Positions 13,197-36,813 of a stretch of 64,000 nucleotides of DNA are shown one piece after another. The notes beneath the pieces are model-generated. The model did no database searches. It saw only the letters and a program-made list of their open reading frames with translations, and had not been told where the DNA came from. Source of the stretch: Ophelia neglecta. Its lineage: Eukaryota. Location: the NCBI GenBank assembly GCA_965285935.1, contig OZ260663.1, forward strand, positions 97,092,001-97,156,000. The letters run 5' to 3'. Positions within the stretch are counted from its first letter, which is position 1. Every line of letters begins with the position of its first letter. Both the position numbers and the translations under genes were made by a program.

Positions 13197-14024
13197 ACTG
13201 GAACAATCCTGGTTTATTCCAAAGATTCTTGACTACATGTGCATCCTGTAAGAAAATGTAATAAGTTAAACATTTGCTTGTAACATAGAAAAGTGTTTAA
13301 AATAACACAAGATGATCTTAGGAGTGTAGTTTAACATGCGATACAGACGAAAGATTGTCCACATTCTATTATCTGCACTTATTCCAATTTCTATAGTACC
13401 CAAGTAAGGAATGTTTATACAAATATATATATTGAGAGTTTATGCAAAATGTTTTCCAGTCAACTAAGCTTTGAGTGAGGTTTGTCAGGACTGTAATTAT
13501 ACAAATCGAGAATGTTATTTGTGTTTGTATTGATATTACAACATGTTATGACGTAAGACGAATTGGTGTTTCTATGTCGACGTCTACTTTTATATACTTA
13601 ATACTGTTATAACTTATATATATTATATTTACTCAATCCGAAACGAACGCCATGGTGGACTCAGTATTTGCATGTGGTGGTAATTCAACACAATTTGTTG
13701 ATATATTAAACAAGTTTAATTTACATGATTACTCAGATATCAGACACCTCAGAATGCAGCGCTCTATGACAATAAAAAAGTAATTATTTGCAGGAGTAAA
13801 ATGGATTTCGTTATAAGTGTGAATCTGTCGGTCAGGTCGATGTGTGTTGTAAATGACAACTATTTGAAATGATTATTACAAATACTGACACATTCACCAT
13901 GAGCATTATATAATTATGACCTTTATAAAATCCATGCTTTTGTCAGTATGCTGAGCTTCAGATAAGCTGATTTGTAAACAGATATGATACATGAAATGCG
14001 TATATGTTTTAATTTCGACGTCCA

Positions 14025-14105
14025 GGGGCGGGTCACTAATATATTAGTAGCTCTCCACTGTCACGTGACGTTCTTTAGCCGGTCGCCACGGTCCCGTGAC
14101 GTCAC
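14025..14105. promoter_or_regulatory. Promoter-like motif cluster: GC box, palindromic E-box, CRE (copy at 34533-34613)
   Basis: GGGGCGGG 14025-14032, GTCACGTGAC 14060-14069 and GTGACGTCAC 14096-14105 in a locally CpG-rich patch; function unverified. Confidence 0.3.
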
Positions 14106-15339
14106 AAGGCGTCTGTTTTCATTAGCCATTCATGTTACTACAGACCGAATACATATAGAGACAGGGAATACTACTTAAATACACTTGATAGTCAATAGGC
14201 AGGGCTCGGGCGTTTATTATGTCGGGCTGATAATCATCATTAGTACAAAAGTCCCGACAAATCTTGTTAATGGCACATTCACCTCTGTCGTACTATGATT
14301 TACATCATTTTTATAGGCATTTTAATGAATATAAGGTTTACTATGATTCGATGTCATCCACCAACGATGCCGGAAAGTCAGCTACATTATCATAACATGA
14401 TATTTATTTGTGTTGAAAGCTACTATTGACGGACAATATGCTTAAAAACTACTTTCGATCGACAATGTTGAATCATTGATATCATTCATGATATTCATAT
14501 TTAGCGAATCACCTGAGACAGCACCTGGGAGATTACGTGTGAAATGACACCTGGTGTTACATATGCCATACCACCTCGGCTGACACCTCAAGCCATGGGG
14601 CGTCTGAAATGTCTCATTAAATACACAGAGCACACATAACATGCCATTGATAAATTAAACCGTATTTAAAATGTCCTATATATCATTAAGATCTCCCTGG
14701 GTTATACAACACAAGCAAGAAGCACGAAATCTCCTGGCCTGATTGCTGCTGTGGCCTCGAGATCATCTCTATATGCAAGTCATGCAAGGTAGAAGCTGAA
14801 GAAGGTAGGCACCCCAGCATTTTTAAGCTTCTCACTGATAAATTCGAATATTTAGCACAATTCACTCAAAAACCTACAAAAAACGTTAAAACAAACAAAA
14901 TATGACATATAGAATACATGCCACGGGATATATCAAACTTTAAAGAGTAAAACCGCTTGTTTTACATATATAAGCCATAGGTTATAAGAGAGCGCCCAAA
15001 TACAAACGATTTAAACAAATGATCAAATTACGCTTAACAAACGAGTATAATCTAATATCAAACTGCTCTGAGTTGTATAAGTTGTCGAAAACAAATATTT
15101 GCGAGGACATAAATATCATCGAGCTTGTGACTTCCGGGTCGCGTGTTGGATGTGCCGCGCTTATTTGCAAACGGATGACTGACAATCTGTTAACTACAAT
15201 AGTGTATGAATAGCGTCACGGCAGAAGAATACCCGGATGACTTAACGGCAGACACTCGGAGTACCAATGTATCTTTCAAAAAGAAGGGGCATGTGGTCAG
15301 TAGTTGTACAGTAAGACATTATGTATCCTGGGCAATCAG

Positions 15340-15582
15340 GGTCCGGTTTCTAGATACGGTATTAACTCTAAGCTTGAATTAAAGTCAGGTTGGACGTGCT
15401 TGATCGATTTTAACTTACTAAATAGGTGTTTCTATAAACTAGATTTGGCCTTAAACCTACCCATTTTGACCTGAATCTTAATCCTGCTCATTAGAAACAC
15501 CGATTAACTCGGTCTCAGTTAATTTAATCGGTAATAAGCTAATCTTATCTCTAAATTTAAATCTGCTTCTTGTATCCGGGCC
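15340..15582. mobile_element. PIF/Harbinger-like MITE (copy at 35848-36090)
   Basis: Imperfect TIRs GGTCCGGTTTCTAGA / TCTTGTATCCGGGCC; flanks CAG / CAT as an approximate 3-bp TSD. Confidence 0.45.
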
Positions 15583-15847
15583 CATGCGTAATTTGTAAAC
15601 GAAGGAAATATCAGAAACAGGTCGTGAATTTATCGCACAAATATCGCAAGATCAAGGCGACATTCTCGCGATAATGAGCCGATATCACCACGGTTTCCGG
15701 CAAGCGGGACTGTACATCATCTTTTCCAGATTGTTTATCAGTTATGTTATCCAAGTTTATTTAGGCTTGTTTATCGTTATTTTTAATTAAAAGATAATTG
15801 ATATGCGTGCGTATATGCCTCATTGAGATCTATTTGATTTTTTTTAG

Positions 15848-16241
15848 GACCAGTATAGGTTTGTGCACACTGCCATGTTGGAGGCTTATACAATTGGCGT
15901 CACAGCAATATCTCTTAGTGAGATACAACATAGACTAACTGAACTGACCACCCCGGACGAAACAGGATCGGCTAAAATACATAATCAGTTCAATGTAAAA
16001 TAATATTTCTAAATCACACGTTTAATTTAATTTTTTTTTCTTCCCTGTAAGATTTGAACGCATTGTTAGTTTAGCAGTTTTGTTTATATAGTTCTAAACG
16101 TATTTATTATTATTCGAAAGTATATGTTTTGTATGTTCGAACAGATGTTACAAGTATTAAAACCAGGAAGACGTGTCGAAGGCACTGAAGGAAGAAACGA
16201 AATTAATGTGGATAAAAACAGGAGTAATGCTATTATTCCTG
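15848..16241 (+). pseudogene. First two exons of the orphan PTP D1-tail/D2 cassette, truncated by the tandem array
   Basis: Exons 15848-15994 (DQYRFVHTAMLEA...) and 16145-16241 (...KNRSNAIIP); the sequence switches to the array at 16304-16306. Confidence 0.85.
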
Positions 16242-18367
16242 GTAAATTCGCTTTTTGCTCGTTTTCATATCTTTCGTTGACGATTATCGACTGCCAGAGA
16301 AATGCAAAAAGAAGCTGCCCTTCCGGTTTGTAAAAAATATTTTGCTGTCGCAGGTGCTCTTTTGCTGCACTTTACTCCTTGAAAAATTTTGTTTTAGGCA
16401 AAAGAGGCTGGTCTTTTGCTGTGTTTTGCTCCCGTCCAAATTTTAAGGCAAAAAGAAGCTGCTCTCCCGGATGTAAAAAATATTTTGCTGTTGCTGATGC
16501 CCTTTGCTAATTTTTTGCTCCTGTCCAAAACTTTTTGGGCAAAAAGAGACTGCTCTCCCGGTTTGTAAAAAATATTTTGCTATTGCAGGTGCTCTTTTGC
16601 TGTACTTTACTCCTTGTAAAAAAATTTTTAGGCAAAAGAAGCTGCTCTTTTGCTATATTTTACTCCCATCCACAAATTTTAAGGCAAAAAGAAGCTACTC
16701 TCCTGGTTTGTAAAAAATATTTTGCTGTTGCAGGTGCCCTTTTGCTATACTGTACTCCTGTCAAAATTTTTTTGGGCAAAACGGGGCGCTCTACTAAATT
16801 ACGTCTATTTGGCACTTGTCCTGGCTGGTCTCCCGGTTTGTGGGGGATTTTTTGTTGTTGCAGGTGCTTTTTTGCTACATCTTACTCCTGTCCACATAAA
16901 TTTCAGGCAAAAAGAAGCACGCCCCTAAACTGTAGCCTATAAAGCACTTGTCCAAGCCGCTCTCCCGAAAAATTTTCCGCTGTTGCAAATGCTCTCTTGC
17001 TATATGTTACTCCTTGAAAAAATTTTCTAGCCAAAAGGGACTGCTCTCTTACTGCAGAAAAATTTGCTGGGGTTGCGGTTACCCCTTCACTGCATTTGAC
17101 TCGCTACGTACACTTTAGATGCAGAACTTCTCCTTATCTATGTCCTTTTAGGCGTTTGCTGCAACTGCTCTCCGATTGTACCAACCACATTTCTGCTGCT
17201 TCAACGGTTCCCAAAAAATATTTACACTACACAGCCTCTAATACAACAACCATCAAAGCCTCAGCTATACTCTGCTTAAACTACTGTACCACCTTCCAAA
17301 GCCATACTATTAAATAATACAATAACTTAGCGCAAACCTAAATTATTCATAATTGTTAGTCAGGTAATTATGCGAATTTTCCTCATACGAGAAGCGCGTC
17401 ACGGCACACAAGAGACTCTTGTACAGAAACGCGCTTAGGGTAGTGGTGCCGTCTGATGAGATCACTACTTTACAATAATTCGTCTTCGATTTAGGCAACA
17501 ACGTCAAAATTTTTTCCAAATACCCGTCTTGTATGAGCAAATGAAGCATAATGTGCACACCTAAACCAGCTAGCATCTAAATATTCAATCAATTAAAAAC
17601 AAAACCAACAGCCCCAATTATAGGATACACTGGACTGTTGCTTGATGTACGGGCCATGTACAGGTTACATCAATAAATTTTGAATCGCAGTCTTTCGTAA
17701 ACGCGCTTTTAATCACACCATTTTGCAATATTAAAGTGAGTTCTCACTTTAGCATTGCCCTCCCTAATAGCCCATAAATAGGTTTTTTTCACCCACTCTG
17801 AACTGGTTTTTCTCAGCTTGGTTGTTATCAAGGCTTTTCAACTTTGTTGGAAGCACTTTTCTCAGGCTAACACCTTTGAATTGTCGAATGCCCGCAGATT
17901 CTGTCCAAGGTAGCAGCGTAGGAAGAGATCCTGTAGTTAAGAAATACGATATGATATGACTACCCGCTAGACGATAGCAGCATTCGACGAACATACCACC
18001 TGATCAAAGAACCGGCTTCTCCGTTTATAAGTTTGTTTTAGTTTTGTTTCTGGTTTTTAAAAATACGTTTCAATGGTGTGGAGCCGTGTAATTTAGAAGC
18101 TTCCAAAATTTATTCACACGCGACTAATCGCATAATTCATCTGTACGTGCTTCTGCATTGATGCAGCTGTTCATCCTCCTACAACTATAGTCCAAATTCC
18201 ATTAATCTTCACCTATATAAACTGTTATCTGCCCAATTAAATTACTACAAAATATCCCACCAAAAGGCTTTAACCCCTCCCTAACCCAACCCATGCCACA
18301 GGCTATGATAGAATAAAACATAACCTATGGAAATCCTCCTCTCTAATGCAAAAGTGCAAACTATTCC

Positions 18368-18776
18368 AAAAAATCTTCAATTCAATACAAATAGCTATAA
18401 CCATGTCTAACCCCCCCCCCCAAACCCCCATCCATACCACAGGCTGTGATGGTCTCAAAAAATCTTCAATTCAATACAAGTATCTATAACCATGTCTAAC
18501 CCCCCCCCAAACCCCCATCCATACCACAGGCTGTGATGGTCTCAAAAAATCTTCAATTCAATACAAATGTCTATAACCATGTCTAACCCCCCCCCCCAAA
18601 CCCCCATCCATACCACAGGCTGTGATGGGCTCAAAAAATTTTCAATTCAATACAAATAGCTATAACCATGTCTAACCCCCCCACCCCCAAACCCCCATCC
18701 ATACCACAGGCTGTAATGGTCTCAAAAAATTTTCAATTCAATACAAACAGCTATAACCATACCTAACCCCCCCCCT
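18368..18776. repeat. ~89-bp sub-repeat (~4.6 copies) with TAACCCCCCCCC-AAACCCCC tracts; recurs at ~21852-22260 and ~25340-25750
   Basis: Unit AAAAAATCTTCAATTCAATACAAATAGCTATAACCATGTCTAAC(C)nAAACCCCCATCCATACCACAGGCTGTGATGGTCTC; starts at 18368, 18457, 18544, 18633, 18724. Confidence 0.95.
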
Positions 18777-19234
18777 TGCATCTACTACAAGCTAAAAGAT
18801 CCTGCCAGCTGCCTGCACGGCATAGCAAACAGTTGTTTGCCCTCACTACCTGCGTTGCTAGGCACGCCGCGTCGATTTACAAACTGCGAACTGAAAAATA
18901 TTTGTTTATAAATAATTCCTACCAGATGCCTGCACTGCACATTACGTAGCGCGCGTGCCTTCACTACCAGCGTTACTAGGCACGCCATCTTGATTTACAA
19001 ACTGTCAGCCGAAGACCGCTGCTCATATTGATATACCCAAACCAGCCGAGACCGTGCCTAAGAAGATCTGACGTTTTACCACCAGGACTTACACAAGAGC
19101 ACCTTCGCTGTGGCAATTTTTCACCCTTCCTGTGTTGCGATTGTTCATTTACTGCTACGGGCGCTGTTCGCCGCGTACAACTCATTACCTACGCTATTCA
19201 GGTTAGAGAAACATTCTCCTAAATCGTGTCCTGT

Positions 19235-20570
19235 TAGGCACTTGTCCCAGCTGCTTTCCCGGACCCCCAAAAAAATTTTCTTTGATGTTGTATGTGGACT
19301 TCTGCTAAGTTTTACTCCTTGTCCACCAATTTTTAGGCAAAAAAGAAGCACTCTCCTAAATTATGCCCTTTAAAGCACTCGTCCCAGCTGCTCTCCCGGT
19401 TTGAAAAATTTTTTTGCTGCTGCTGCTGCTGATGCTCTTTTGCTATTCTTTACTCCTGTCCAAAAAATTTTAGGCAAAAAGAAGCTGCTCTCCCGGTTTG
19501 TGGAAAACATTTTGCTGTCGCAGGTGGTCTTTTGCCATCTTTTACTCCTGTCAAAATAATTTTGGGAGAAAACGAAGCACTCTCCTGGCGTGATAGTATT
19601 TTTTGCTCCTGTCCGGAGCTTTTTGGGTTTGTAAAAAATATTTTGCTGCTGCTGGTGCTCTTTTGCTGTTTTTTGCTCCTGTCCAAGACTTTTGGGCTAA
19701 AAGAGGCTGCTCTCCCGGTTTGTGAGGGACTTTTTGCTGTTGCGGGTACTCTGTTGCTGTCCTTTGCTCCTGTCCAAAAATTTTTAGGCAAAAAGAAGCT
19801 GCCCTTCCGGTTTGTAAAAAATATTTTGCTGTCGCAGGTGCTCTTTTGCTGCACTTTACTCCTTGAAAAATTTTGTTTTAGGCAGAAGAGGCTGGTCTTT
19901 TGCTGTGTTTTGCTCCCGTCCAAATTTTAAGGCAAAAAGAAGCTGCTCTCCCGGATGTAAAAAATATTTTGCTGTTGCTGATGCCCTTTGCTAATTTTTT
20001 GCTCCTGTCCAAAACTTTTTGGGCAAAAAGAGACTGCTCTCCCGGTTTGTAAAAAATATTTTGCTATTGCAGGTGCTCTTTTGCTGTACTTTACTCCTTG
20101 TAAAAAATTTTTTAGGCAAAAGAAGCTGCTCTTTTGCTATATTTTACTCCCATCCACAAATTTTAAGGCAAAAAGAAGCTACTCTCCTGGTTTGTAAAAA
20201 ATATTTTGCTGTTGCAGGTGCCCTTTTGCTATACTGTACTCCTGTCAAAATTTTTTTGGGCAAAACGGGGCGCTCTACTAAATTACGTCTATTTGGCACT
20301 TGTCCTGGCTGGTCTCCCGGTTTGTGGGGGATTTTTTGCTGTTGCAGGTGCTTTTTTGCTACATCTTACTCCTGTCCACATAAATTTCAGGCAAAAAGAA
20401 GCACGCCCCTAAACTGTAGCCTATAAAGCACTTGTCCAAGCCGCTCTCCCGAAAAATTTTCCGCTGTTGCAAATGCTCTCTTGCTATATGTTACTCCTTG
20501 AAAAAATTTTCTAGCCAAAAGGGACTGCTCTCTTACTGCAGAAAAATTTGCTGGGGTTGCGGTTACCCCT
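19235..20570. repeat. Degenerate ~92-bp sub-repeat block (with ~52-bp half units) present in every array unit
   Basis: Consensus ~GGCAAAAAGAAGCTGCTCTCCCGGTTTGTAAAAAATATTTTGCTGTTGCAGGTGCTCTTTTGCTGTACTTTACTCCTGTCCAAAAATTTTTA; spacing 91-93 bp. Block boundaries approximate. Confidence 0.9.
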
Positions 20571-23500
20571 TCACTGCATTTGACTCGCTCTGTACACTTT
20601 AGATGCAGAACTTCTCCTTATCTATGTCCTTTTAGGCGTTTGCTGCAACTGCTCTCCGATTGTACCAACCACATTTCTGCTGCTTCAACGGTTCCCAAAA
20701 AATATTTACACTACACAGCCTCTAATACAACAACCATCAAAGCCTCAGCTATACTCTGCTTAAACTACTGTACCACCTTCCAAAGCCATACTATTAAATA
20801 ATACAATAACTTAGCGCAAACCTAAATTATTCATAATTGTTAGTCAGGTAATTATGCGAATTTTCCTCATACGAGAAGCGCGTCACGGCACACAAGAGAC
20901 TCTTGTACAGAAACGCGCTTAGGGTAGTGGTGCCGTCTGATGAGATCACTACTTTACAATAATTCGTCTTCGATTTAGGCAACAACGTCAAAATTTTTTC
21001 CAAATACCCGTCTTGTATGAGCAAATGAAGCATAATGTGCACACCTAAACCAGCTAGCATCTAAATATTCAATCAATTAAAAACAAAACCAACAGCCCCA
21101 ATTATAGGATACACTGGACTGTTGCTTGATGTACGGGCCATGTACAGGTTACATCAATAAATTTTGAATCGCAGTCTTTCGTAAACGCGCTTTTAATCAC
21201 ACCATTTTGCAATATTAAAGTGAGTTCTCACTTTAGCATTGCCCTCCCTAATAGCCCATAAATAGGTTTTTTTCACCCACTCTGAACTGGTTTTTCTCAG
21301 CTTGGTTGTTATCAAGGCTTTTCAACTTTGTTGGAAGCACTTTTCTCAGGCTAACACCTTTGAATTGTCGAATGCCCGCAGATTCTGTCCAAGGTAGCAG
21401 CGTAGGAAGAGATCCTGTAGTTAAGAAATACGATATGATATGACTACCCGCTAGACGATAGCAGCATTCGACGAACATACCACCTGATCAAAGAACCGGC
21501 TTCTCCGTTTATAAGTTTGTTTTAGTTTTGTTTCTGGTTTTTAAAAATACGTTTCAATGGTGTGGAGCCGTGTAATTTAGAAGCTTCCAAAATTTATTCA
21601 CACGCGACTAATCGCATAATTCATCTGTACGTGCTTCTGCATTGATGCAGCTGTTCATCCTCCTACAACTATAGTCCAAATTCCATTAATCTTCACCTAT
21701 ATAAACTGTTATCTGCCCAATTAAATTACTACAAAATATCCCACCAAAAGGCTTTAACCCCTCCCTAACCCAACCCATGCCACAGGCTATGATAGAATAA
21801 AACATAACCTATGGAAATCCTCCTCTCTAATGCAAAAGTGCAAACTATTCCAAAAAATCTTCAATTCAATACAAATAGCTATAACCATGTCTAACCCCCC
21901 CCCCCCAAACCCCCATCCATACCACAGGCTGTGATGGTCTCAAAAAATCTTCAATTCAATACAAGTATCTATAACCATGTCTAACCCCCCCCCAAACCCC
22001 CATCCATACCACAGGCTGTGATGGTCTCAAAAAATCTTCAATTCAATACAAATATCTATAACCATGTCTAACCCCCCCCCCCAAACCCCCATCCATACCA
22101 CAGGCTGTGATGGGCTCAAAAAATTTTCAATTCAATACAAATAGCTATAACCATGTCTAACCCCCCCACCCCCAAACCCCCATCCATACCACAGGCTGTA
22201 ATGGTCTCAAAAAATTTTCAATTCAATACAAACAGCTATAACCATACCTAACCCCCCCCCTTGCATCTACTACAAGCTAAAAGATCCTGCCAGCTGCCTG
22301 CACGGCATAGCAAACAGTTGTTTGCCCTCACTACCTGCGTTGCTAGGCACGCCGCGTCGATTTACAAACTGCGAACTGAAAAATATTTGTTTATAAATAA
22401 TTCCTACCAGATGCCTGCACTGCACATTACGTAGCGCGCGTGCCTTCACTACCAGCGTTACTAGGCACGCCATCTTGATTTACAAACTGTCAGCCGAAGA
22501 CCGCTGCTCATATTGATATACCCAAACCAGCCGAGACCGTGCCTAAGAAGATCTGACGTTTTACCACCAGGACTTACACAAGAGCACCTTCGCTGTGGCA
22601 ATTTTTCACCCTTCCTGTGTTGCGATTGTTCATTTACTGCTACGGGTGCTGTTCGCCGCGTACAACTCATTACCTACGCTATTCAGGTTAGAGAAACATT
22701 CTCCTAAATCGTGTCCTGTTAGGCACTTGTCCCAGCTGCTTTCCCGGACCCCCAAAAAAATTTTCTTTGATGTTGTATGTGGACTTCTGCTAAGTTTTAC
22801 TCCTTGTCCACCAATTTTTAGGCAAAAAAGAAGCACTCTCCTAAATTATGTCCTTTAAAGCACTCGTCCCAGCTGCTCTCCCGGTTTGAAAAATTTTTTT
22901 GCTGCTGCTGCTGCTGCTGATGCTCTTTTGCTATTCTTTACTCCTGTCCAAAAAATTTTAGGCAAAAAGAAGCTGCTCTCCCGGTTTGTGGAAAACATTT
23001 TGCTGTCGCAGGTGGTCTTTTGCCATCTTTTACTCCTGTCAAAATAATTTTGGGAGAAAACGAAGCACTCTCCTGGCGTGATAGTATTTTTTGCTCCTGT
23101 CCGGAGCTTTTTGGGTTTGTAAAAAATATTTTGCTGCTGCTGGTGCTCTTTTGCTGTTTTTTGCTCCTGTCCAAGACTTTTGGGCTAAAAGAGGCTGCTC
23201 TCCCGGTTTGTGAGGGACTTTTTGCTGTTGCGGGTACTCTGTTGCTGTCCTTTGCTCCTGTCCAAAAATTTTTAGGCAAAAAGAAGCTGCCCTTCCGGTT
23301 TGTAAAAAATATTTTGCTGTCGCAGGTGCTCTTTTGCTGCACTTTACTCCTTGAAAAATTTTGTTTTAGGCAAAAGAGGCTGGTCTTTTGCTGTGTTTTG
23401 CTCCCGTCCAAATTTTAAGGCAAAAAGAAGCTGCTCTCCCGGATGTAAAAAATATTTTGCTGTTGCTGATGCCCTTTGCTAATTTTTTGCTCCTGTCCAA

Positions 23501-26500
23501 AACTTTTTGGGCAAAAAGAGACTGCTCTCCCGGTTTGTAAAAAATATTTTGCTATTGCAGGTGCTCTTTTGCTGTACTTTACTCCTTGTAAAAAAATTTT
23601 TAGGCAAAAGAAGCTGCTCTTTTGCTATATTTTACTCCCATCCACAAATTTTAAGGCAAAAAGAAGCTACTCTCCTGGTTTGTAAAAAATATTTTGCTGT
23701 TGCAGGTGCCCTTTTGCTATACTGTACTCCTGTCAAAATTTTTTTGGGCAAAACGGGGCGCTCTACTAAATTACGTCTATTTGGCACTTGTCCTGGCTGG
23801 TCTCCCGGTTTGTGGGGGATTTTTTGCTGTTGCAGGTGCTTTTTTGCTACATCTTACTCCTGTCCACATAAATTTCAGGCAAAAAGAAGCACGCCCCTAA
23901 ACTGTAGCCTATAAAGCACTTGTCCAAGCCGCTCTCCCGAAAAATTTTCCGCTGTTGCAAATGCTCTCTTGCTATATGTTACTCCTTGAAAAAATTTTCT
24001 AGCCAAAAGGGACTGCTCTCTTACTGCAGAAAAATTTGCTGGGGTTGCGGTTACCCCTTCACTGCATTTGACTCGCTACGTACACTTTAGATGCAGAACT
24101 TCTCCTTATCTATGTCCTTTTAGGCGTTTGCTGCAACTGCTCTCCGATTGTACCAACCACATTTCTGCTGCTTCAACGGTTCCCAAAAAATATTTACACT
24201 ACACAGCCTCTAATACAACAACCATCAAAGCCTCAGCTATACTCTGCTTAAACTACTGTACCACCTTCCAAAGCCATACTATTAAATAATACAATAACTT
24301 AGCGCAAACCTAAATTATTCATAATTGTTAGTCAGGTAATTATGCGAATTTTCCTCATACGAGAAGCGCGTCACGGCACACAAGAGACTCTTGTACAGAA
24401 ACGCGCTTAGGGTAGTGGTGCCGTCTGATGAGATCACTACTTTACAATAATTCGTCTTCGATTTAGGCAACAACGTCAAAATTTTTTCCAAATACCCGTC
24501 TTGTATGAGCAAATGAAGCATAATGTGCACACCTAAACCAGCTAGCATCTAAATATTCAATCAATTAAAAACAAAACCAACAGCCCCAATTATAGGATAC
24601 ACTGGACTGTTGCTTGATGTACGGGCCATGTACAGGTTACATCAATAAATTTTGAATCGCAGTCTTTCGTAAACGCGCTTTTAATCACACCATTTTGCAA
24701 TATTAAAGTGAGTTCTCACTTTAGCATTGCCCTCCCTAATAGCCCATAAATAGGTTTTTTTCACCCACTCTGAACTGGTTTTTCTCAGCTTGGTTGTTAT
24801 CAAGGCTTTTCAACTTTGTTGGAAGCACTTTTCTCAGGCTAACACCTTTGAATTGTCGAATGCCCGCAGATTCTGTCCAAGGTAGCAGCGTAGGAAGAGA
24901 TCCTGTAGTTAAGAAATACGATATGATATGACTACCCGCTAGACGATAGCAGCATTCGACGAACATACCACCTGATCAAAGAACCGGCTTCTCCGTTTAT
25001 AAGTTTGTTTTAGTTTTGTTTCTGGTTTTTAAAAATACGTTTCAATGGTGTGGAGCCGTGTAATTTAGAAGCTTCCAAAATTTATTCACACGCGACTAAT
25101 CGCATAATTCATCTGTACGTGCTTCTGCATTGATGCAGCTGTTCATCCTCCTACAACTATAGTCCAAATTCCATTAATCTTCACCTATATAAACTGTTAT
25201 CTGCCCAATTAAATTACTACAAAATATCCCACCAAAAGGCTTTAACCCCTCCCTAACCCAACCCATGCCACAGGCTATGATAGAATAAAACATAACCTAT
25301 GGAAATCCTCCTCTCTAATGCAAAAGTGCAAACTATTCCAAAAAATCTTCAATTCAATACAAATAGCTATAACCATGTCTAACCCCCCCCCCCCAAACCC
25401 CCATCCATACCACAGGCTGTGATGGTCTCAAAAAATCTTCAATTCAATACAAGTATCTATAACCATGTCTAACCCCCCCCCAAACCCCCATCCATACCAC
25501 AGGCTGTGATGGTCTCAAAAAATCTTCAATTCAATACAAATATCTATAACCATGTCTAACCCCCCCCCCCAAACCCCCATCCATACCACAGGCTGTGATG
25601 GGCTCAAAAAATTTTCAATTCAATACAAATAGCTATAACCATGTCTAACCCCCCCACCCCCAAACCCCCATCCATACCACAGGCTGTAATGGTCTCAAAA
25701 AATTTTCAATTCAATACAAACAGCTATAACCATACCTAACCCCCCCCCCCTTGCATCTACTACAAGCTAAAAGATCCTGCCAGCTGCCTGCACGGCATAG
25801 CAAACAGTTGTTTGCCCTCACTACCTGCGTTGCTAGGCACGCCGCGTCGATTTACAAACTGCGAACTGAAAAATATTTGTTTATAAATAATTCCTACCAG
25901 ATGCCTGCACTGCACATTACGTAGCGCGCGTGCCTTCACTACCAGCGTTACTAGGCACGCCATCTTGATTTACAAACTGTCAGCCGAAGACCGCTGCTCA
26001 TATTGATATACCCAAACCAGCCGAGACCGTGCCTAAGAAGATCTGACGTTTTACCACCAGGACTTACACAAGAGCACCTTCGCTGTGGCAATTTTTCACC
26101 CTTCCTGTGTTGCGATTGTTCATTTACTGCTACGGGTGCTGTTCGCCGCGTACAACTCATTACCTACGCTATTCAGGTTAGAGAAACATTCTCCTAAATC
26201 GTGTCCTGTTAGGCACTTGTCCCAGCTGCTTTCCCGGACCCCCAAAAAAATTTTCTTTGATGTTGTATGTGGACTTCTGCTAAGTTTTACTCCTTGTCCA
26301 CCAATTTTTAGGCAAAAAAGAAGCACTCTCCTAAATTATGTCCTTTAAAGCACTCGTCCCAGCTGCTCTCCCGGTTTGAAAATTTTTTTTGCTGCTGCTG
26401 CTGCTGATGCTCTTTTGCTATTCTTTACTCCTGTCCAAAAAATTTTAGGCAAAAAGAAGCTGCTCTCCCGGTTTGTGGAAAACATTTTGCTGTCGCAGGT

Positions 26501-28406
26501 GGTCTTTTGCCATCTTTTACTCCTGTCAAAATAATTTTGGGAGAAAACGAAGCACTCTCCTGGCGTGATAGTATTTTTTGCTCCTGTCCGGAGCTTTTTG
26601 GGTTTGTAAAAAATATTTTGCTGCTGCTGGTGCTCTTTTGCTGTTTTTTGCTCCTGTCCAAGACTTTTGGGCTAAAAGAGGCTGCTCTCCCGGTTTGTGA
26701 GGGACTTTTTGCTGTTGCGGGTACTCTGTTGCTGTCCTTTGCTCCTGTCCAAAAATTTTTAGGCAAAAAGAAGCTGCCCTTCCGGTTTGTAAAAAATATT
26801 TTGCTGTCGCAGGTGCTCTTTTGCTGCACTTTACTCCTTGAAAAATTTTGTTTTAGGCAAAAGAGGCTGGTCTTTTGCTGTGTTTTGCTCCCGTCCAAAT
26901 TTTAAGGCAAAAAGAAGCTGCTCTCCCGGATGTAAAAAATATTTTGCTGTTGCTGATGCCCTTTGCTAATTTTTTGCTCCTGTCCAAAACTTTTTGGGCA
27001 AAAAGAGACTGCTCTCCCGGTTTGTAAAAAATATTTTGCTATTGCAGGTGCTCTTTTGCTGTACTTTACTCCTTGTAAAAAAAATTTTAGGCAAAAGAAG
27101 CTGCTCTTTTGCTATATTTTACTCCCATCCACAAATTTTAAGGCAAAAAGAAGCTACTCTCCTGGTTTGTAAAAAATATTTTGCTGTTGCAGGTGCCCTT
27201 TTGCTATACTGTACTCCTGTCAAAATTTTTTTGGGCAAAACGGGGCGCTCTACTAAATTACGTCTATTTGGCACTTGTCCTGGCTGGTCTCCCGGTTTGT
27301 GGGGGATTTTTTGCTGTTGCAGGTGCTTTTTTGCTACATCTTACTCCTGTCCACATAAATTTCAGGCAAAAAGAAGCACGCCCCTAAACTGTAGCCTATA
27401 AAGCACTTGTCCAAGCCGCTCTCCCGAAAAATTTTCCGCTGTTGCAAATGCTCTCTTGCTATATGTTACTCCTTGAAAAAATTTTCTAGCCAAAAGGGAC
27501 TGCTCTCTTACTGCAGAAAAATTTGCTGGGGTTGCGGTTACCCCTTCACTGCATTTGACTCGCTACGTACACTTTAGATGCAGAACTTCTCCTTATCTAT
27601 GTCCTTTTAGGCGTTTGCTGCAACTGCTCTCCGATTGTACCAACCACATTTCTGCTGCTTCAACGGTTCCCAAAAAATATTTACACTACACAGCCTCTAA
27701 TACAACAACCATCAAAGCCTCAGCTATACTCTGCTTAAACTACTGTACCACCTTCCAAAGCCATACTATTAAATAATACAATAACTTAGCGCAAACCTAA
27801 ATTATTCATAATTGTTAGTCAGGTAATTATGCGAATTTTCCTCATACGAGAAGCGCGTCACGGCACACAAGAGACTCTTGTACAGAAACGCGCTTAGGGT
27901 AGTGGTGCCGTCTGATGAGATCACTACTTTACAATAATTCGTCTTCGATTTAGGCAACAACGTCAAAATTTTTTCCAAATACCCGTCTTGTATGAGCAAA
28001 TGAAGCATAATGTGCACACCTAAACCAGCTAGCATCTAAATATTCAATCAATTAAAAACAAAACCAACAGCCCCAATTATAGGATACACTGGACTGTTGC
28101 TTGATGTACGGGCCATGTACAGGTTACATCAATAAATTTTGAATCGCAGTCTTTCGTAAACGCGCTTTTAATCACACCATTTTGCAATATTAAAGTGAGT
28201 TCTCACTTTAGCATTGCCCTCCCTAATAGCCCATAAATAGGTTTTTTTCACCCACTCTGAACTGGTTTTTCTCAGCTTGGTTGTTATCAAGGCTTTTCAA
28301 CTTTGTTGGAAGCACTTTTCTCAGGCTAACACCTTTGAATTGTCGAATGCCCGCAGATTCTGTCCAAGGTAGCAGCGTAGGAAGAGATCCTGTAGTTAAG
28401 AAATAC

Positions 28407-31400
28407 AAACAGATTTAAAAGCATGTACGTTTAAGCTATATATGTTTATCTTTGAGTACGAATTTATTTATACAGCTTTAAGCACCACCTCTATAATAAG
28501 ACCACATGTCAGTTCAGACCACTAATATGAAGACTGTGCTGTATACTTTCAATGAGAGAGCACCCTGTCTAAACAGACCACCTCCGAAATCAAACCAGCA
28601 TTTTCCAGTCCCTGGGGTGGTCTTAATTCACAGGTTTCACTGCATATTGTTCTAATGTGGATAATTTATTGTTTCCTTATGTCACCGTCCGATGCTTCCA
28701 CACGTATTGTTCTGGAACTGGACCCCAATGACTCTGATTCGGATTATATTAATGCCAACTACATAACAGTGAGTAAAAAATGTAGCAAAATTGAGGAAGT
28801 ATATCGTGTTGTTGACTTCATGTTCATTGCAGTAATTGCTATTTTATAGCAATTGCTTATATTCAAATTAAATTAATTTTCTTCCACAGTGACACGTTTT
28901 ATTCTTCATTGTGTTTATTTTAATATACTACATGATTTAAGTGCTTCCCTTCATCGGTGTTTTTATTTATTTCGTTTAGTTTGCCACTCTGAGTCATTGA
29001 CTGCTGTTTTACGAATATACAAATGTGTACTTAGGTGTCTATTTGAAAATATACTTTAATTGAACTTAATTTGTTGCATTCCTCATACATTTCAATCAAG
29101 GGGTACAAGGACATGAAGAAGGCCTATGTAGCTACACAAGGTAGGGCGATTTCTTGTTTGTCTTTATCATATAGTTTAAGCGCTGACTATCGATGGCGGC
29201 AAGGTCCTCTATGTTTATGTATTGTTTTTACGGTTGCAATGTGCTTTACCTTTTCAGTATTATATTTTTTGAAAATAATAGTTGTCAGTTTGTCTCTGCC
29301 AGCTCCTAATAAACACACAACAGCAGAATTTTGGACCATGATATGGCAACTTAAATCAAACAGAATCATCATGCTTACAAGATTATTTGAAAACTGCGGG
29401 GTAAATATGTGTTTGGTTCCTTACTATTAGAAAATTATGACGTGAAGCGTGTTATCCTACATGAGCTTCAAGGAAAGTCATTATTATTCCGCTCATCTAA
29501 TTATATATTGCAGAAAAAAAGCGTGCAATACTGGTCCGATAAAGTTGGATATATGAAAAAGTTTGGCCAATTCAAAATTGAGACAATGAAGAGGGATACA
29601 TTCACCGACTATGCTCTTAGTATACTGCGTGTAACCAAGGCGGTAGGCTTTATATTTTTCGTTTCAGTTTCATAATGTTAAATACTTATTGATGCTGAAC
29701 CATCTACTATAAGAATGACATGTTTGATACAATAACGCCTGAGTCCATTTGCACTTTAAGGGCGAGTCTCGCACAGTGCGCCATCTCCAGTATCTAAGTT
29801 GGCCCGACAGGTCGGCACCGGATAACGCCTACCCACTGCTCGCCTTCAGGAGGAAGGTCAGATCTTTAGACAATGTCAGCCATGGTCCTATGATTGTGCA
29901 CTGCAGGTATGTACAAATATTTAGACTATGTCTGTAATGTATACATTAATGGTGGAATAATTGAAACGTCGCCTTTTACCTGCAATGTTCAAGTGTTTCA
30001 TTATGTACTGTATTCTTCAATACTATCCACATGATTCCCTAACCAGTGCCGGTATAGGCCGAACCGGGACGTTTATTGCCCTGGACTTCCTGCTGCAGCA
30101 GGCAAATGCTGAATCTCAAATCGACGTCGTAACCCTTGTAAACCACATGAGAACAGAACGAATGAAAATGATTCAAACCTTGGTACATGCACAGATAAAA
30201 CACATCTTGTATTTGTAATAATTTCATTAGAGTAGGATACATCCTGAAAGCTGTTTAATCAAGGAAAGAATGTTTTACATTCGTATTAAATAATGAAGTT
30301 ATAACAGTTTAACATCCAAATTTGACAGGTATTTTGTATTATTGTTTCCAGGACCAGTATAAATTTGTGTACACGGCCGTTTTGGAGGCTGTAACCATCG
30401 GGGATACAGCTATACCATACTATGAACTGCAAAAACGATTGACTGCACTAACCTCCGTGGACAAAACAGGATTATACCCACTGAAGACTCAGTTTTCTGT
30501 AATAGCCAATTTTGCCTTTAGCAATAATTGCTTAGTTTTGTTCATCATTTATCCATCGTATTGAGAGTTTTGATAATCAAATATTAAAATTAACATTACA
30601 TAGATATTGAAGGAATTGAAATACACTGAACCAGGGGAAGCGAGTGACGGACAAAAACAGATAAATGTGGGCAAGAACAGAACTTTGAAAATTATTCCTG
30701 GTAAGAAAGCGTCCCATTAATGCAACAATAGGCTTAGTTTCATTTTATACTTTAGAGGTTATCGAGGAAAACTGATTAAATTGGTGAATTCGGTGAGAAT
30801 TGTTATCATTAGAACATTCTTGTTGACATCAAATAATGATAAACATCCTTTTGGCAAGAATTTTTTTGATTATAAGTTTGGCAATTACTGAATATGGCCT
30901 AAGTTGCAACAGAGTTTAAGCCAAAATGGCCTAAATACCAACCTTCAAGATGAAAACTGTTTAAGTGACATGGTTGGCCAGTATCATCATTGGCTAAGCT
31001 ACATCAATATTGAAACATGGCAAAAGGGACACTGAAATATAGCCTAATTAACAAATTAAAAATTGGGAAGTGACATGGTAGATAAACTCTTTATATATTG
31101 AATAATCACTGCTTTCATACCAATTTCATTAAGGCTATATTTAGGAAGTTAGCTACAATAAGTATGTCATTTTGGTATACACAAATCCCAAGCGACCAAA
31201 GGGTCATTTGGGTCTTCTTTTATCGTTCATGCGTATTCACGTGTTTTTTTTATATACGAACATGCTGGATAATTTCAATAAGAATTGCCTCCTTCTTGTT
31301 TAGTTTATCCATTTGCTCGTATATTTATGATAATGACCTTATGTTTACAGATGACAGTATGAGACCCAGACTGGTGACTTCGGGAGCTCATGACAACACT

Positions 31401-33704
31401 TACATCAACGCTGTGTTTGTCGACGTTAGCAGATTTACTTTTCTTCATTTATAAAATATATTTGAACCCCATAAGCAGAACCATTGTTTAACAATTATTT
31501 TGTGTTAATGATACATTTACACTATTTGACTATATTGACTAAATACAGGTATACGACAATATATATAAATGCAGGTGTTAATATGTAAAGCTTGCTATTT
31601 TATTACAGAATTTCCGAAATGAACGTGGTATTATCGCTACCCAGATGCCTCTGTCAAATACAGTCGATGATTTCTGGAGATTGGTCTACCAGCACAGACG
31701 TACTACTATCGTCATGCTCAATCCGCTTGATAAAAATGTCAAGGTAGAATCAAAGTGTTCCTGCTTGTTTTCAAGTCTTCGACCTTCCCTAAAAAATTTA
31801 GATTTTAATTTACAAGGTCATAAATGAAACACTTCAGAATTGCACGGCATATTGGCCAGATGACAAAGACCTGAAACAAAGACACGCAGATATGGAAGTC
31901 AAGTTCGTATCCTCGGATCTTTGTGGACCTATTCGGACACGAGTTTTCCAAGTTGGCAAAATGGAAAAGGTACAAATACTTGGAATAATCAATTTCCTAA
32001 AAAAAAATGTTGGTTTATATTCCTAGTTAAATGTCAGTGTTCGATACGCCCAACCGCAGCTTAATTTTCTTCTTCTCCCCAGAGAAATGAAGAAATACTG
32101 ACTGTCAAACAATTCCAGTTTTTGGATTGGCCAACTGGCGACGAGATTCCTAACGGCGGTTCTCTACTCGATCTTATTGCAAACGTATCCGCCTCGGAGA
32201 AAGATGAATGTTCAATTCTTGTTCATTGCATGTACGTATTATTGCATATAAACTGGTGGTGAACAAGGTTTTATTCATATCGTAGTCAACAGACATGGTC
32301 ACCTATCTTGTGTGCTTTTCATTATTTTAGGACCAACATTCATACAGGTTGAGAAAATAGCGGAAGTTAGTTAGTTCCACGTGGTGTTCCATTAAAATGT
32401 GTTAGTACTATCTAGCTAAATTGTTTTAGCCGAATAGTTTTAACTGGCTTAAATACAGGCGGGCTAACAGGCTCAATTAAGCTAGACAATTAAAATTGAG
32501 CATACTGTAGTAATTCAAAACTTGGTTCTGGCAAGGTCAATAGGAGAACACGAAACTAATGCACAGGCTTTTTGCGAATGGGTGTCAAACATTTTCTTAA
32601 AGCACAATCTAGCACTGGTGGGGGAGAATGGGGAATTGTTTGGAGAGAGAATGCATCGTTTTTATTAACAATCAAAATAACTACCAATTCAGATTTTTCG
32701 GCATACTGAATTAATTTTCTTCTCATTTGTGCAGGACGTTATAACTTTCTCTGGTACTTCTTATTGTTACAATGTTGAGGTCAATATAATTCTTATTTCT
32801 TTGGTCATGTACAAACTTGGCGCGCGCCAACTTAATTTAATTTCCATTAAGCCTGTGACCATGTCATTCGTCTATGTGAGAGTTGAGCCCGTGTCGAGAG
32901 TCTTTTTCTTTATTACTAATAAGTTTGAATGACATATTTGCTATTGAGTAAGCGGTATTTATATTTAACAAGCGCGTAGTTACAATGAAGTGGCAGGTAT
33001 GGGGTAGGTGCGGTTTTGCCTTGTTTTGCCTTGTTTGAATAAGTAAAGCGATCTGTCAGTTTCCTGACAAGTATGTCCAATACTTTCGGTGCCAATTCAC
33101 GATATTTACCCAATCAGAGTTCAAAGCAGCTCCTCGTTGCTTGTGAATACTAATGAAGGAAAAATGATTTTAAATGTGTTTTGTTGTATTGAAAATCAGG
33201 TCTTGGTACATGTACGAGCACTAGGGAGATAATTCATCAAAGATGTATTAAATGCTACGTAGTATAGCTGATACATTATTCATCTCTCTATACACCAACG
33301 TGTATATTACCTACAAGAACTTCGTAATGATGTTTCAGGGATGGTGCTTCACGGTCGGGATTATTTTGTGCTTCGTGCTACATGTTAGATAAGTTGAAGT
33401 CAGACAAGGAAGTGGATGTCTTCCAGGCTGTCAGATGTGTCTCCAGAGGGCGCCCTCAGTTTATTAACTCAATGGTAGGTATATGTGTAATGCACCTGCA
33501 GCCAGTTGGTGCAACTATTTTAGCCAATGTGTATTAGTTATTGTTGATTTTCACTTTTGGAAAATTATTATTGGTAGCACGGAACACAATGTTTAAATCA
33601 AATTTTGTTTAGTTTCCATTTATGTTTATTAGAAACAGTATCGATTTCTACTCGACGTGGCCAAGGAATATATATCATCACATGACGCCTTCGACAATAA
33701 TTGA
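28407..33704 (+). pseudogene. 5'-truncated duplicate of RPTP-A (PTP D1 and D2 exons only)
   Basis: Begins mid-exon 11 with an 8-bp deletion; the exon-12 acceptor is mutated (TCAG to TCCG at 28690-28691); no ectodomain or TM exons; downstream exons run intact to TGA 33702-33704. Confidence 0.9.
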
Positions 33705-36700: not shown

Positions 36701-36813
36701 GAAACGAAATTAATGTGGATAAAAACAGGAGTAATGCTATTATTCCTGGTAAATTCGCTTTTTGCTCGTTTTCATATCTTTCGTTGACGATTATCGACTG
36801 CCAGAGAAATGCA
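28407..36813 (+). repeat. Segmental duplication copy 2 (partner 7977-16306)
   Basis: Colinear with copy 1; the first ~1.4 kb is diverged (about 3% plus indels) and the rest is essentially identical. Confidence 0.97.

What the first reader, a model, noticed from the sequence alone, without database searches (positions are those of the whole stretch)
16304..28406. 12.1-kb concatemer inserted between two copies of an 8.3-kb direct duplication via microhomology
Seen: the left junction shares GCA between the host (AGAAATGCA) and the repeat (GGCAAAAAG). The right junction aligns repeat GTTAAGAAA with host TTTAAGAAAC and has an adjacent 8-bp deletion. The array starts and ends mid-unit (3.47 copies) and its units are nearly identical. 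Inference: template switching (MMBIR/FoSTeS) onto a satellite, or capture of a rolling-circle/eccDNA concatemer, which duplicated the phosphatase exons at the same time. This is a possible mechanism for cluster expansion.
Basis: partly seen in the sequence, partly recalled or inferred. Interest (0 to 1): 0.75.

Follow-up and report, generated by a model that had tools for sequence, protein, structure and literature searches.

The report
Retroelement concatemer insertion with 8.3-kb duplication
The 12.1-kb array is not captured satellite DNA but a head-to-tail multi-copy insertion of a mobile retroelement, and the insertion duplicated 8.3 kb of the target gene, including both of its phosphatase domains.

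Summary
The structure is real in the sequence. D1 (7977-16306), the array (16304-28406) and D2 (28407-36813) lie as described.

The array is not an arbitrary piece of satellite. It is one 5'-truncated unit (1,644 bp) plus three full units (3,484, 3,488 and 3,487 bp). It ends to the base at ...GTAGTTAAGAAATAC. This is the fixed 3' terminus of a dispersed family, seen next to 16 other unrelated flanks.

Relatives with the same termini carry a 751-codon reverse-transcriptase frame. That frame has no endonuclease domain. The family shows the habits described for Penelope-like elements: 5' truncation, partial tandems and head-to-head copies.

Three other insertions of the family have clean flanking duplications of about 100, about 235 and 359 bp. 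The 8.3-kb duplication is therefore best read as an extreme target-site duplication made in one event.

D1 and D2 are identical over 6,984 bp, while the units carry 10 private substitutions. The concatemer therefore arrived ready-made.

The satellite or eccDNA source and the right-junction microhomology do not.

The one read-laying run did not show either junction bridged, so an assembly error is not formally excluded.

The scan had noted the unit and the mosaic tract on this window before.

The parts
7914..8003 (+). Phosphatase exon that holds the target site. It runs from acceptor ttttatag| to donor |GTACGT and reads ...PKNNLRNRFKNIKA. The break lies between 7976 and 7977 (TTTAAG|AAACAG).
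   Evidence: sequence read, with phase-1 continuation into 8270-8346 giving ...KA-Y-DSTRVVL. Pfam did not score this short exon on its own. The motif name is recalled.
7977..16306 (+). D1, the upstream copy of the duplicated target (8,330 bp). It holds the exons of two tyrosine-phosphatase domains.
   Evidence: for the boundaries. Y_phosphatase hits on 8 of 10 exon-bearing frames, covering profile 14-222 (first domain) and 36-225 (second domain).
16304..16306 (.). GCA shared by the D1 end and the truncated unit (5' junction microhomology).
16304..17947 (+). U0, a 5'-truncated unit consisting of the last 1,644 bp of the element.
17948..21431 (+). U1, a full unit (3,484 bp). It carries 7 of the 10 private substitutions.
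21432..24919 (+). U2, a full unit (3,488 bp).
24920..28406 (+). U3, a full unit (3,487 bp). It ends at the family's canonical 3' terminus ...GTAGTTAAGAAATAC.
28407..36813 (+). D2, the downstream copy of the duplicated target (8,407 bp). It starts inside the cut exon, with an 8-bp deletion, an 82-bp and a 4-bp extra segment, and 45 substitutions, all within its first ~1.43 kb (28407-29830). The rest is identical to D1.
28690..28691 (+). In D2, the splice acceptor of the first complete phosphatase exon reads CG where D1 (8268-8269) reads AG.
36814..38422 (+). R, the undisturbed continuation of the gene. It holds the exons of a further phosphatase-like domain and the gene's end.
   Evidence: frames read. 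Not scanned against Pfam.

Best explanation
The array is a single insertion of a non-coding, ORF-deleted derivative of a reverse-transcriptase-encoding retroelement with the habits of a Penelope-like element (PLE).

Proposed steps:
1. A multi-unit RNA, transcribed from a tandem master copy, was reverse-transcribed.
2. Synthesis started at a fixed internal site (...AAATAC) from a bottom-strand 3'-OH at window position 7976|7977, inside a phosphatase exon.
3. The cDNA ran through three whole units and 1,644 bp of a fourth, then stopped. This is the 5' truncation.
4. Its end was joined by a 3-nt microhomology (GCA) to DNA 8.3 kb downstream of the priming site. The stretch between the two points therefore ended up on both sides of the insert, as an 8,330-bp target-site duplication.

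What is shown: the anatomy, the family terminus, the truncations, the recurrent long flanking duplications, the reverse-transcriptase relatives, and the recency.

What is inferred: the RNA intermediate, the internal initiation, and the way the far join was made. The join could have used two breaks far apart, invasion of a sister chromatid by the cDNA, or a nascent strand that re-entered its template behind itself.

The only open reverse-transcriptase frame examined has no endonuclease domain. I therefore think it more likely than not that priming used 3' ends already present in the DNA, which would explain duplications of any length. This step is inference.
For: 1. Terminus. All four units end with the same 15-mer. 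The same end abuts 16 other unrelated flanks on C1, C5, C7, C8, C9 and C12.
2. 5' truncation. Solo copies share that end and start at different unit positions: 2500, 2905, 3023, 3051, 2935, 2941 and about 2023.
3. The unit's 5' start is preceded by a 3' end wherever I saw it. Examples are 122 bp plus a full unit in L018 and arrays at C5:98.86-98.90 Mb, C16 and C2.
4. Long flanking duplications abut both ends of other insertions:
   - L010: 359 bp (354 of 359 identical).
   - L011: 232 and 239 bp (212 of 245 columns identical).
   - L052: 96 and 107 bp (90 of 109 columns identical).
5. A 5,714-bp relative has the same two termini, and its 3' 2.1 kb is 97% identical. It carries a 751-codon open frame where the window unit has about 95 bp.
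6. That frame is a reverse transcriptase.
   - It has 9 database relatives at E from 1.7e-94 to 1.4e-7, one with RVT_1 and one with a C-terminal GIY-YIG domain.
   - A profile of the relatives hits solved reverse transcriptases at E = 1.8e-4.
   - BLASTP against the GIY-YIG-bearing relative gives E = 4e-21 over the RT region.
7. A head-to-head pair of 5'-truncated copies lies at C5:98900620-98900632.
8. One recent event. There are 0 substitutions in 6,984 bp between D1 and D2, against 10 substitution columns in the 12,103-bp array. Under equal rates, P = 4.65e-4 that all 10 fall in the array. The private alleles were found in 0 of the other loci held (8 of the 10 columns were tested).
9. Print, passages read:
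   - PLEs show frequent 5' truncation, partial tandems, adjacent inverted truncated copies and multicopy head-to-tail non-autonomous insertions. Endonuclease-less lineages use accessible 3'-OH ends (PMC8557442).
   - Multi-copy mRNA and internal initiation of reverse transcription (PMC11167929).
   - Flanking duplications of median 900 bp made by a LINE (PMC9977147).
   - An L1 insert at the junction of a tandem duplication (PMC7058536).
Against: - No read evidence for either junction. The one read-laying run gave only short contigs (the listed pieces are 131-362 bp) of a sample that differs from the assembly at many sites. No listed piece bridges 28406.
- No RNA evidence was obtained.
- Pfam finds nothing in the 751-codon frame. 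The profile search found bacterial and group II reverse transcriptases, not telomerase. Only 1 of 9 relatives has GIY-YIG. Placement among Penelope-like elements rests on architecture and habits, not on a tree.
- No hammerhead or other ribozyme at E <= 1 in 19000-29000.
- Long duplications are not universal. None was found at L030 or L032. L018 and L051 showed none within the 1.3-3.6 kb of flank I held.
- An 8.3-kb duplication is 23 times longer than the next longest seen here.
- Seven of the 10 private substitutions sit in one unit. This fits a heterogeneous template, but I did not find that template.
- The 3.3%-diverged first 1.35 kb of D is not explained by this model.
Confidence: 0.75

Rival explanations
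1. DNA-templated template switching (FoSTeS/MMBIR). A replicating strand left D, copied 12.1 kb from a pre-existing genomic array of the repeat (for instance the one 1.77 Mb away), and came back upstream, duplicating D.
For: Near-identical arrays exist on the same chromosome, 99-100% identical in the 3' 400 bp. There is 3-nt microhomology at the left join. The final product is the same as in the best explanation.
Against: Entry and exit points in a DNA template should be arbitrary. Here one of them is the family terminus to the base, and the same terminus-plus-duplication geometry recurs at three other loci. The right join has no microhomology. The private alleles of the units were not found in the arrays I hold.
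Confidence: 0.08
2. Capture of an extrachromosomal circular or rolling-circle DNA concatemer of the repeat by end joining at a break, with the duplication as a by-product.
For: The insert is head-to-tail, has a non-integer copy number, and its units are nearly identical.
Against: A randomly linearised concatemer would have two arbitrary ends. The right end is canonical. The full-length relative encodes a reverse transcriptase, not a Rep protein. End joining of a linear fragment does not by itself duplicate 8.3 kb. Folding of the unit junction shows no significant hairpin (z = -0.90).
Confidence: 0.05
3. Two steps. Either an ordinary insertion was followed by in-situ amplification of the unit through unequal crossing-over, with D duplicated separately, or an older D-D tandem duplication was later hit at its junction.
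For: Tandem arrays can grow by unequal exchange. Copy number varies between loci.
Against: The D copies abut the insert ends exactly. There is no repeat at the D boundaries to drive unequal exchange. The units carry 10 private substitutions while 6,984 bp of D carry none, so the units are not younger than the duplication. A hit exactly on a pre-existing junction would be a coincidence, and it would have to repeat at L010, L011 and L052.
Confidence: 0.05
4. Assembly artefact. Two haplotypes of D were stitched in tandem around a heterozygous insertion, or there is a phase switch.
For: The junctions were not verified by reads. The first 1.35 kb of D1 and D2 differ by 3.3%, an allele-like level, and the rest is identical. 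This would fit a phase switch at about 9322.
Against: There are no Ns. Both junctions have the anatomy of genuine insertions of this family, which a false join would not imitate. A phase switch explains the mosaic tract, but not the D1-end-to-truncated-unit junction, which is unique in the genome.
Confidence: 0.06

Closest known systems
Penelope-like elements, especially endonuclease-less lineages and non-autonomous multicopy head-to-tail derivatives (PMC8557442, PMC3846280, PMC11167929; passages read)
   Same: Single reverse-transcriptase ORF. Frequent 5' truncation. A full copy preceded by a truncated one (pseudo-LTR). Multi-unit head-to-tail insertions. An adjacent inverted truncated copy. 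5' joins by microhomology. A 3' boundary that lies upstream of the ORF in the tandem, as expected from internal initiation on a multi-copy RNA. No canonical hammerhead, as in Naiads.
   Different: No GIY-YIG domain in the open frame, although the copies are interstitial and not confined to telomeres. The 3' untranslated part is very long (about 3 kb, with 89-bp and about 92-bp sub-repeats). Flanking duplications range from 8 bp to 8.3 kb, whereas the PLE passages I read give 8-10 bp or none. Clade placement was not tested by a tree.
Dualen-4b_cRei LINE of Chlamydomonas, and rotifer R9 (PMC9977147, passage read)
   Same: Retroelement insertions flanked by unusually long duplications of the target: median 900 bp for Dualen and 126 bp for R9.
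   Different: Those are LINEs with restriction-like and/or AP endonucleases. Here there is no endonuclease domain and the habits are Penelope-like. The longest case here is about nine times the Dualen median.
L1-bridged tandem duplications in human tumours (PMC7058536, passage read)
   Same: A retroelement insert sits exactly at the junction of a direct tandem duplication. The published model has the cDNA invade a second 3' end on a sister chromatid downstream of the integration site.
   Different: Those are somatic, megabase-scale events involving an L1 with a poly(A) tail and an endonuclease motif. This one is germline, 8.3 kb, multi-unit, and has no poly(A).
FoSTeS/MMBIR tandem duplication with templated insertion (recalled; no paper read here)
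   Same: A tandem duplication with foreign sequence at the junction, and microhomology at one join.
   Different: The inserted sequence has a defined element terminus, and the family recurs with the same geometry.

Membership tests
Penelope-like elements | Reverse transcriptase of the kind that is fused to a GIY-YIG endonuclease | tested here: met
   The RT region aligns with P0006 (E = 4e-21). P0006 has GIY-YIG at residues 538-629. However, only 1 of 9 relatives has it.
Penelope-like elements | GIY-YIG endonuclease in the element's own ORF (the EN+ clades) | tested here: not met
   No Pfam hit in the 751-codon frame. There is no room for a further ORF in the 5,714-bp unit. EN-less clades are known (PMC8557442).
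Penelope-like elements | Frequent 5' truncation and partial tandems (pseudo-LTR) | tested here: met
Penelope-like elements | Inverted 5'-truncated copy adjacent to the 5' end | tested here: met
   Seen at one locus, C5:98900620-98900632. Not present in the window.
Penelope-like elements | Hammerhead ribozyme in the pseudo-LTR | tested here: not met
   Rfam gives 0 matches at E <= 1 in 19000-29000. Naiads also lack it (PMC8557442).
Penelope-like elements | Placement of the RT in the PLE clade, sister to telomerase, with the N-terminal GxKF/Y and DKG motifs | tested here: inconclusive
   LGPGFIP and ADKNLG were read by eye. The profile found bacterial and group II RTs, not telomerase. No tree was built, because I had no reference sequences.
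LINEs with long target duplications (Dualen, R9) | AP or restriction-like endonuclease in the ORF | tested here: not met
LINEs with long target duplications (Dualen, R9) | 5'-truncated insert with a fixed 3' end, flanked by a direct duplication of the target | tested here: met
FoSTeS/MMBIR templated insertion | Microhomology at both joins and arbitrary template end points | tested here: not met
   The left join shares 3 nt and the right join 0 nt. The right end is the family terminus.
Helitron/Replitron (HUH rolling-circle transposons) | Rep/HUH protein in autonomous copies; no or short target duplication | tested here: not met
   The full-length relative encodes an RT. Duplications are long. 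By the passages read, Replitrons are described from plants, algae and protists (PMC10288648).
Locus-bound macrosatellite | Units confined to one locus and grown in place | tested here: not met
   The family is dispersed on at least 8 contigs. The units are more diverged from each other than the flanking duplication is.

The most novel reading that the evidence does not exclude
An endonuclease-less Penelope-like lineage survives inside chromosomes by priming on 3' ends that replication or repair leaves open. Because its cDNA can be joined back anywhere behind the priming point, it routinely makes tandem duplications of the host DNA, from tens of bases to over 8 kb. This would be a germline, retroelement-driven route to duplicating exon cassettes, caught here just after it doubled a two-domain phosphatase cassette inside a cluster with at least 150 phosphatase exon hits.
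Probability: 0.3. Interest if true: 0.8.

Novelty: new variant of a known kind. Interest (0 to 1): 0.62.

Why it matters
Tandem duplication of exons and gene cassettes is usually put down to unequal exchange or replication errors.

Here a mobile element appears to have done it in one step, and very recently: there is no substitution in 7 kb between the copies. The same family left duplications of about 100 to 359 bp at other sites.

If the family really lacks an endonuclease, it offers a natural system for asking how a reverse transcriptase uses pre-existing DNA ends inside chromosomes, and how far from the priming point the cDNA can be joined. Until now that question has been approached mainly through L1 in tumours and one algal LINE.

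For annotation, it is a warning that 'macrosatellites' with a fixed phase at one end may be retroelement multimers.

Tried and rejected
- Ribozymes. Rfam at E <= 1 over 19000-29000 found nothing.
- Origin-like or terminator-like hairpins at the unit junction or the 3' end. Folding was not better than shuffles (z = -0.90 and -0.14).
- Replitrons as a source of variable target duplications. Passages of PMC10288648 describe them from plants, algae and protists, with short duplications in one family only. Rejected once the RT relative was found.
- Reads. One call was allowed. It returned short contigs from a sample unlike the assembly and confounded by paralogues, so neither the junction nor the depth could be judged. 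In the mosaic tract, 8 of the 10 listed read variants equal the D1 base. Because 96-100% paralogues exist, this does not tell alleles from paralogues.
- A long duplication around the C5:98.86 Mb array. Its 3' flank is itself a dispersed repeat, and no second copy lay beyond the array. Inconclusive.
- L030 and L032. Flank searches found no second copy on the other side. L032 has an 8-nt stretch shared by the element and the target at the 5' join.
- L028, L009 and L005/L006. Their flanks are tandem repeats, so flanking similarity there says nothing. I left them out of the count of clean cases.
- A donor for the D2-type first 1.2 kb. The best other match in the genome is 94% for the whole query, or 96-97% in separate pieces, so no paralogue in this assembly is the source.
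- Pfam on the RT frame: no hit.
- PDB by single sequence: only a chance hit at E = 0.81.
- In one search I set two unit boundaries 4 bp off. Columns 1-4, 3491-3494 and 1795-1846 of that table are artefacts. One search repeats the count with the right boundaries. One search used the alignment for 8 of the 10 substitution columns.
- I did not build a spliced gene model. Exons were scanned one by one and splice phases were read from the DNA. The joined step was left out.
- Supplementary files of PMC8557442, which list the families, were not seen and may already hold this family.
- Print searches behind the statement that I found no Penelope-like family with kilobase target duplications: (5 papers), (66 papers, 12 listed). 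These searches are narrow.
Full report
OBSERVATION

The window (G000 contig C5:97092001-97156000) has no N.

Self-BLAST shows a direct duplication:
- 7994-8521 pairs with 28416-28943 at 97.3%.
- 8514-16306 pairs with 29018-36813 at 99.54% over 7,797 columns.

Between the two copies, 16304-28406 matches itself at shifts of 3,484, 3,488 and 3,487 bp with 99.73-99.88% identity.

Reading the joins and aligning the copies puts D1 at 7977-16306 (8,330 bp) and D2 at 28407-36813 (8,407 bp).

An 8-bp deletion lies in the first 25 bp of D2.

The complete unit end ...GTAGTTAAGAAATAC is followed directly by host AAACAGATT. The TTAAGAAA similarity between host and unit lies beside the join, not across it.

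THE UNIT BELONGS TO A DISPERSED FAMILY WITH A FIXED 3' END

The 3.49-kb unit has at least 72 matching pieces on six contigs (27 of 342 candidates were scored). Most matches stop at the same unit coordinate.

A search with the last 400 bp gave 40 matches. I then lined up the last 40 bp and the next 50 bp of every held locus. The family ends at ...CCTGTAGTTAAGAAATAC in all of them but one (one copy reads ...AAATTC). After that it runs either into the next unit (GATATGA...) or into unrelated DNA.

I count 17 different flanks, the window's among them.

The four unit ends in the window lie at 17947, 21431, 24919 and 28406. The array is therefore the last 1,644 bp of a unit followed by three whole units, and it stops exactly at the family terminus. 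A random break would do that about once in 3,487 times.

TRUNCATION AND TANDEMS

Solo copies share the 3' end and begin at different places in the unit:
- 989 bp at 99.4% identity
- 583 bp at 99.3%
- 465 bp at 99.4%
- about 440-560 bp at 94-96%
- about 1.5 kb at 91%

The unit's 5' start is much rarer. Wherever I saw it, it was preceded by a 3' end:
- 122 bp plus one full unit in L018.
- An array of at least 11 units with spacing of about 3.37 kb at C5:98863521-98897502.
- Six units with spacing of about 3.02 kb on C16.
- Pairs on C2.

At C5:98900620-98900632, a minus-strand unit truncated near unit position 420 meets head-to-head a plus-strand unit truncated at 2514.

A REVERSE-TRANSCRIPTASE RELATIVE

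In L014 (C5:107.71 Mb), units of 5,714 bp have the same first bases (GATATGAAATGAC...) and the same last bases. Their 3' 2.1 kb is 97% identical to the window unit. They carry a 751-codon open frame at 387-2639, where the window unit has about 95 bp. The window unit is therefore an ORF-deleted derivative.

What the searches say about that frame:
- Pfam scores nothing in it.
- It has nine database relatives, with E from 1.7e-94 to 1.4e-7. Among them, P0008 matches RVT_1 (6.9e-11) and P0006 has a GIY-YIG domain at 538-629.
- A profile of the ten sequences hits solved reverse transcriptases (best E = 1.8e-4). These are bacterial and group II enzymes. Telomerase did not appear.
- The protein atlas puts it with 'reverse transcriptase domain-containing' clusters, commonest in rotifers.
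- BLASTP against P0006 aligns residues 339-661 with 166-470 (E = 4e-21). P0006's nuclease domain lies beyond that, whereas our frame ends 90 residues later without one.
- The genome holds few copies. One has an uninterrupted 751-codon frame, another a 672-codon frame at 97% identity, and the rest have stops or frameshifts.

COMPARISON WITH PRINT (PASSAGES READ)

- Craig et al. [quoted passage not shown]
- Arkhipova et al. 2013 (PMC3846280) describe partial tandems, 8-10-bp target duplications, and a 5' junction made by microhomology without a duplication.
- The 2024 Mobile DNA paper (PMC11167929) proposes a multi-copy mRNA and initiation of reverse transcription at an internal site near the pseudo-LTR/ORF junction. 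That fits a 3' boundary lying 386 bp upstream of the frame in the tandem.

LONG TARGET DUPLICATIONS ARE A HABIT OF THIS FAMILY

I compared the two flanks of insertions whose flanks I held. Three have clean direct repeats that abut both ends of the insert:
- L010 (C9:23.10 Mb): 359 bp, 354 of 359 identical, around a 1,539-bp insert.
- L011 (C12:62.84 Mb): 239 and 232 bp, 212 of 245 columns identical, around a 1,973-bp insert.
- L052 (C7:106.46 Mb): 107 and 96 bp, 90 of 109 columns identical, around a 443-bp insert.

Other cases:
- L053 has a possible 24-bp repeat at 79% identity.
- L032 has an 8-nt stretch at its 5' join that the element and the target share.
- L030 and L032 have no long repeat; flank searches of the whole genome found none on the far side.
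- L018 and L051 show none within the flanks I held.
- L028, L009 and L005/L006 lie in tandem repeats and were dropped from the count.

With the window, that makes four insertions with duplications of about 100, about 235, 359 and 8,330 bp.

In print, I found:
- Long duplications for an algal LINE (median 900 bp) and for rotifer R9 (126 bp) (PMC9977147).
- An L1 insert at the junction of a 22.6-Mb tandem duplication, with a model in which the cDNA invades a 3' end on the sister chromatid (PMC7058536).
- No Penelope-like family with such duplications.

ONE RECENT EVENT, WITH A READY-MADE CONCATEMER

All 45 substitutions and three of the four indels between D1 and D2 lie in 7977-9322. From 9323 to 16306 the copies are identical, apart from one base in a T run.

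The units differ at 10 substitution columns (7 private to U1, 2 to U3 and 1 to U0) and three indels. If both had aged together, the chance that all 10 fall in the 12,103 bp of array and none in the 13,968 bp of identical D is 4.65e-4.

For 8 of the 10 columns I looked for the private alleles in the other loci held and found none.

The differences therefore came in with the insert, either from a template with slightly different units or from copying errors. The array was not built in place from one unit after the duplication.

The left junction is unique in the genome. The 200 bp of D end recur at D2 and at 11 paralogues, none followed by the unit. Ten paralogues show an uninterrupted L-D sequence across the target site.

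WHAT WAS HIT

The plus strand carries a receptor-type tyrosine phosphatase gene. In order it has lectin-like, EGF-like and FN3 exons, a Thr/Pro-rich 87-bp repeat, a membrane span, and then the phosphatase exons.

Scanned one by one, 8 of 10 frames in D match Y_phosphatase. They cover one domain at profile positions 14-222 and a second at 36-225.

The break at 7976|7977 lies inside the exon 7914-8003. The duplication left that exon whole in L-D1 and cut in D2.

The last exon in D ends in phase 1 (CCT G|gtaaat). The exon at 8270 starts in phase 1, so a splice from the D1 end into D2 would stay in frame. However, the D2 copy of that acceptor reads CG instead of AG.

The gene sits in a very large cluster. 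One exon gave 150 scored hits (the cap), all but one on C5, mostly between 95.8 and 112.7 Mb.

WHAT STAYS OPEN

- Reads. The single read-laying run returned short contigs from one sample that differs from the assembly at many sites. No listed piece bridges 28406. A joint skipping 28941-29024 shows that the form without the 82 bp exists in that sample.
- The mosaic first 1.35 kb. It is 3.3% diverged. The D2 type has no match better than 97% elsewhere. The D1 type is 99% identical to a paralogue 222 kb away over the stretch 7777-8176 that I searched. This could be an exchange between haplotypes, conversion from a paralogue, or a phase switch of the assembler.
- How the far join was made.
- Whether the family truly works without a nuclease, or borrows one.

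VERDICT

The thing is a retroelement multimer with an extreme target-site duplication. It is a new variant of known kinds of event rather than a new kind.

Noticed in passing
window 7977-9322 versus 28407-29830: All differences between the two 8.3-kb copies are packed into the first 1.35 kb: 45 substitutions, plus an 8-bp, an 82-bp and a 4-bp indel. The remaining 6,984 bp are identical. The 82 bp are present in more distant paralogues, so the D1 type carries a deletion. The cause is not settled: haplotype exchange, paralogue conversion or an assembly phase switch.
   Followed up: partly
G000 C5, about 95.8-112.7 Mb: Very large cluster of receptor tyrosine-phosphatase genes. One 64-residue exon gave 150 scored hits (the cap), all but one on this chromosome. 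Several are 100% identical at protein level (97.32, 98.03, 98.24 Mb). Eight of roughly 45 loci of the retroelement family that I listed lie in this 17-Mb stretch. This is a lead only, because local duplications inflate the count.
   Followed up: partly
window 41721-51233: LTR retrotransposon with 451-bp LTRs at 98.9% identity (41721-42171 and 50783-51233). It has long gag-like and pol-like frames at 42513-48321, with pol split over several frames. Observed only.
   Followed up: no
window 6220-6955: 87-bp tandem repeat (8.5 copies, 85% matches). It is in frame with a Thr/Pro-rich stalk just before the membrane span of the phosphatase receptor.
   Followed up: no
window 28558-28754 and 8053-8176: Short, very abundant dispersed repeat inside D. 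Word depth reached about 117,000-225,000 in the laid contigs, and there are 87-90% matches of about 120 bp on many contigs. An unrelated repeat of about 210 bp flanks L032.
   Followed up: no
G000 C5:98863521-98903108 and beyond; C16:945369-960817: Larger concatemers of the same family. One has at least 11 minus-strand units joined head-to-head to a plus-strand array. An older array has six units with spacing of about 3.02 kb at 80% identity. A 62-bp piece next to the first array's 3' end recurs with about 3.6-kb spacing at 98.913-98.920 Mb.
   Followed up: partly
L017:180-2138 (G000 C5:115778180-115780138, minus strand): A 653-codon open frame with a weak GDSL-lipase-like match (E = 1.9e-6, below Pfam's cut-off). 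It lies directly downstream of a reverse-transcriptase copy of the family.
   Followed up: no
window 57304-57617: 40-bp tandem repeat (7.8 copies, 76% matches) with 79-bp and 119-bp higher-order periods.
   Followed up: no
L030 flank, G000 C5:4309684-4313138: The young 465-bp copy of the family sits at the edge of a tandem repeat with a period of about 1.05 kb (88-91% between copies). Related arrays lie at C5:5.15 Mb and C8:85.76 Mb.
   Followed up: no
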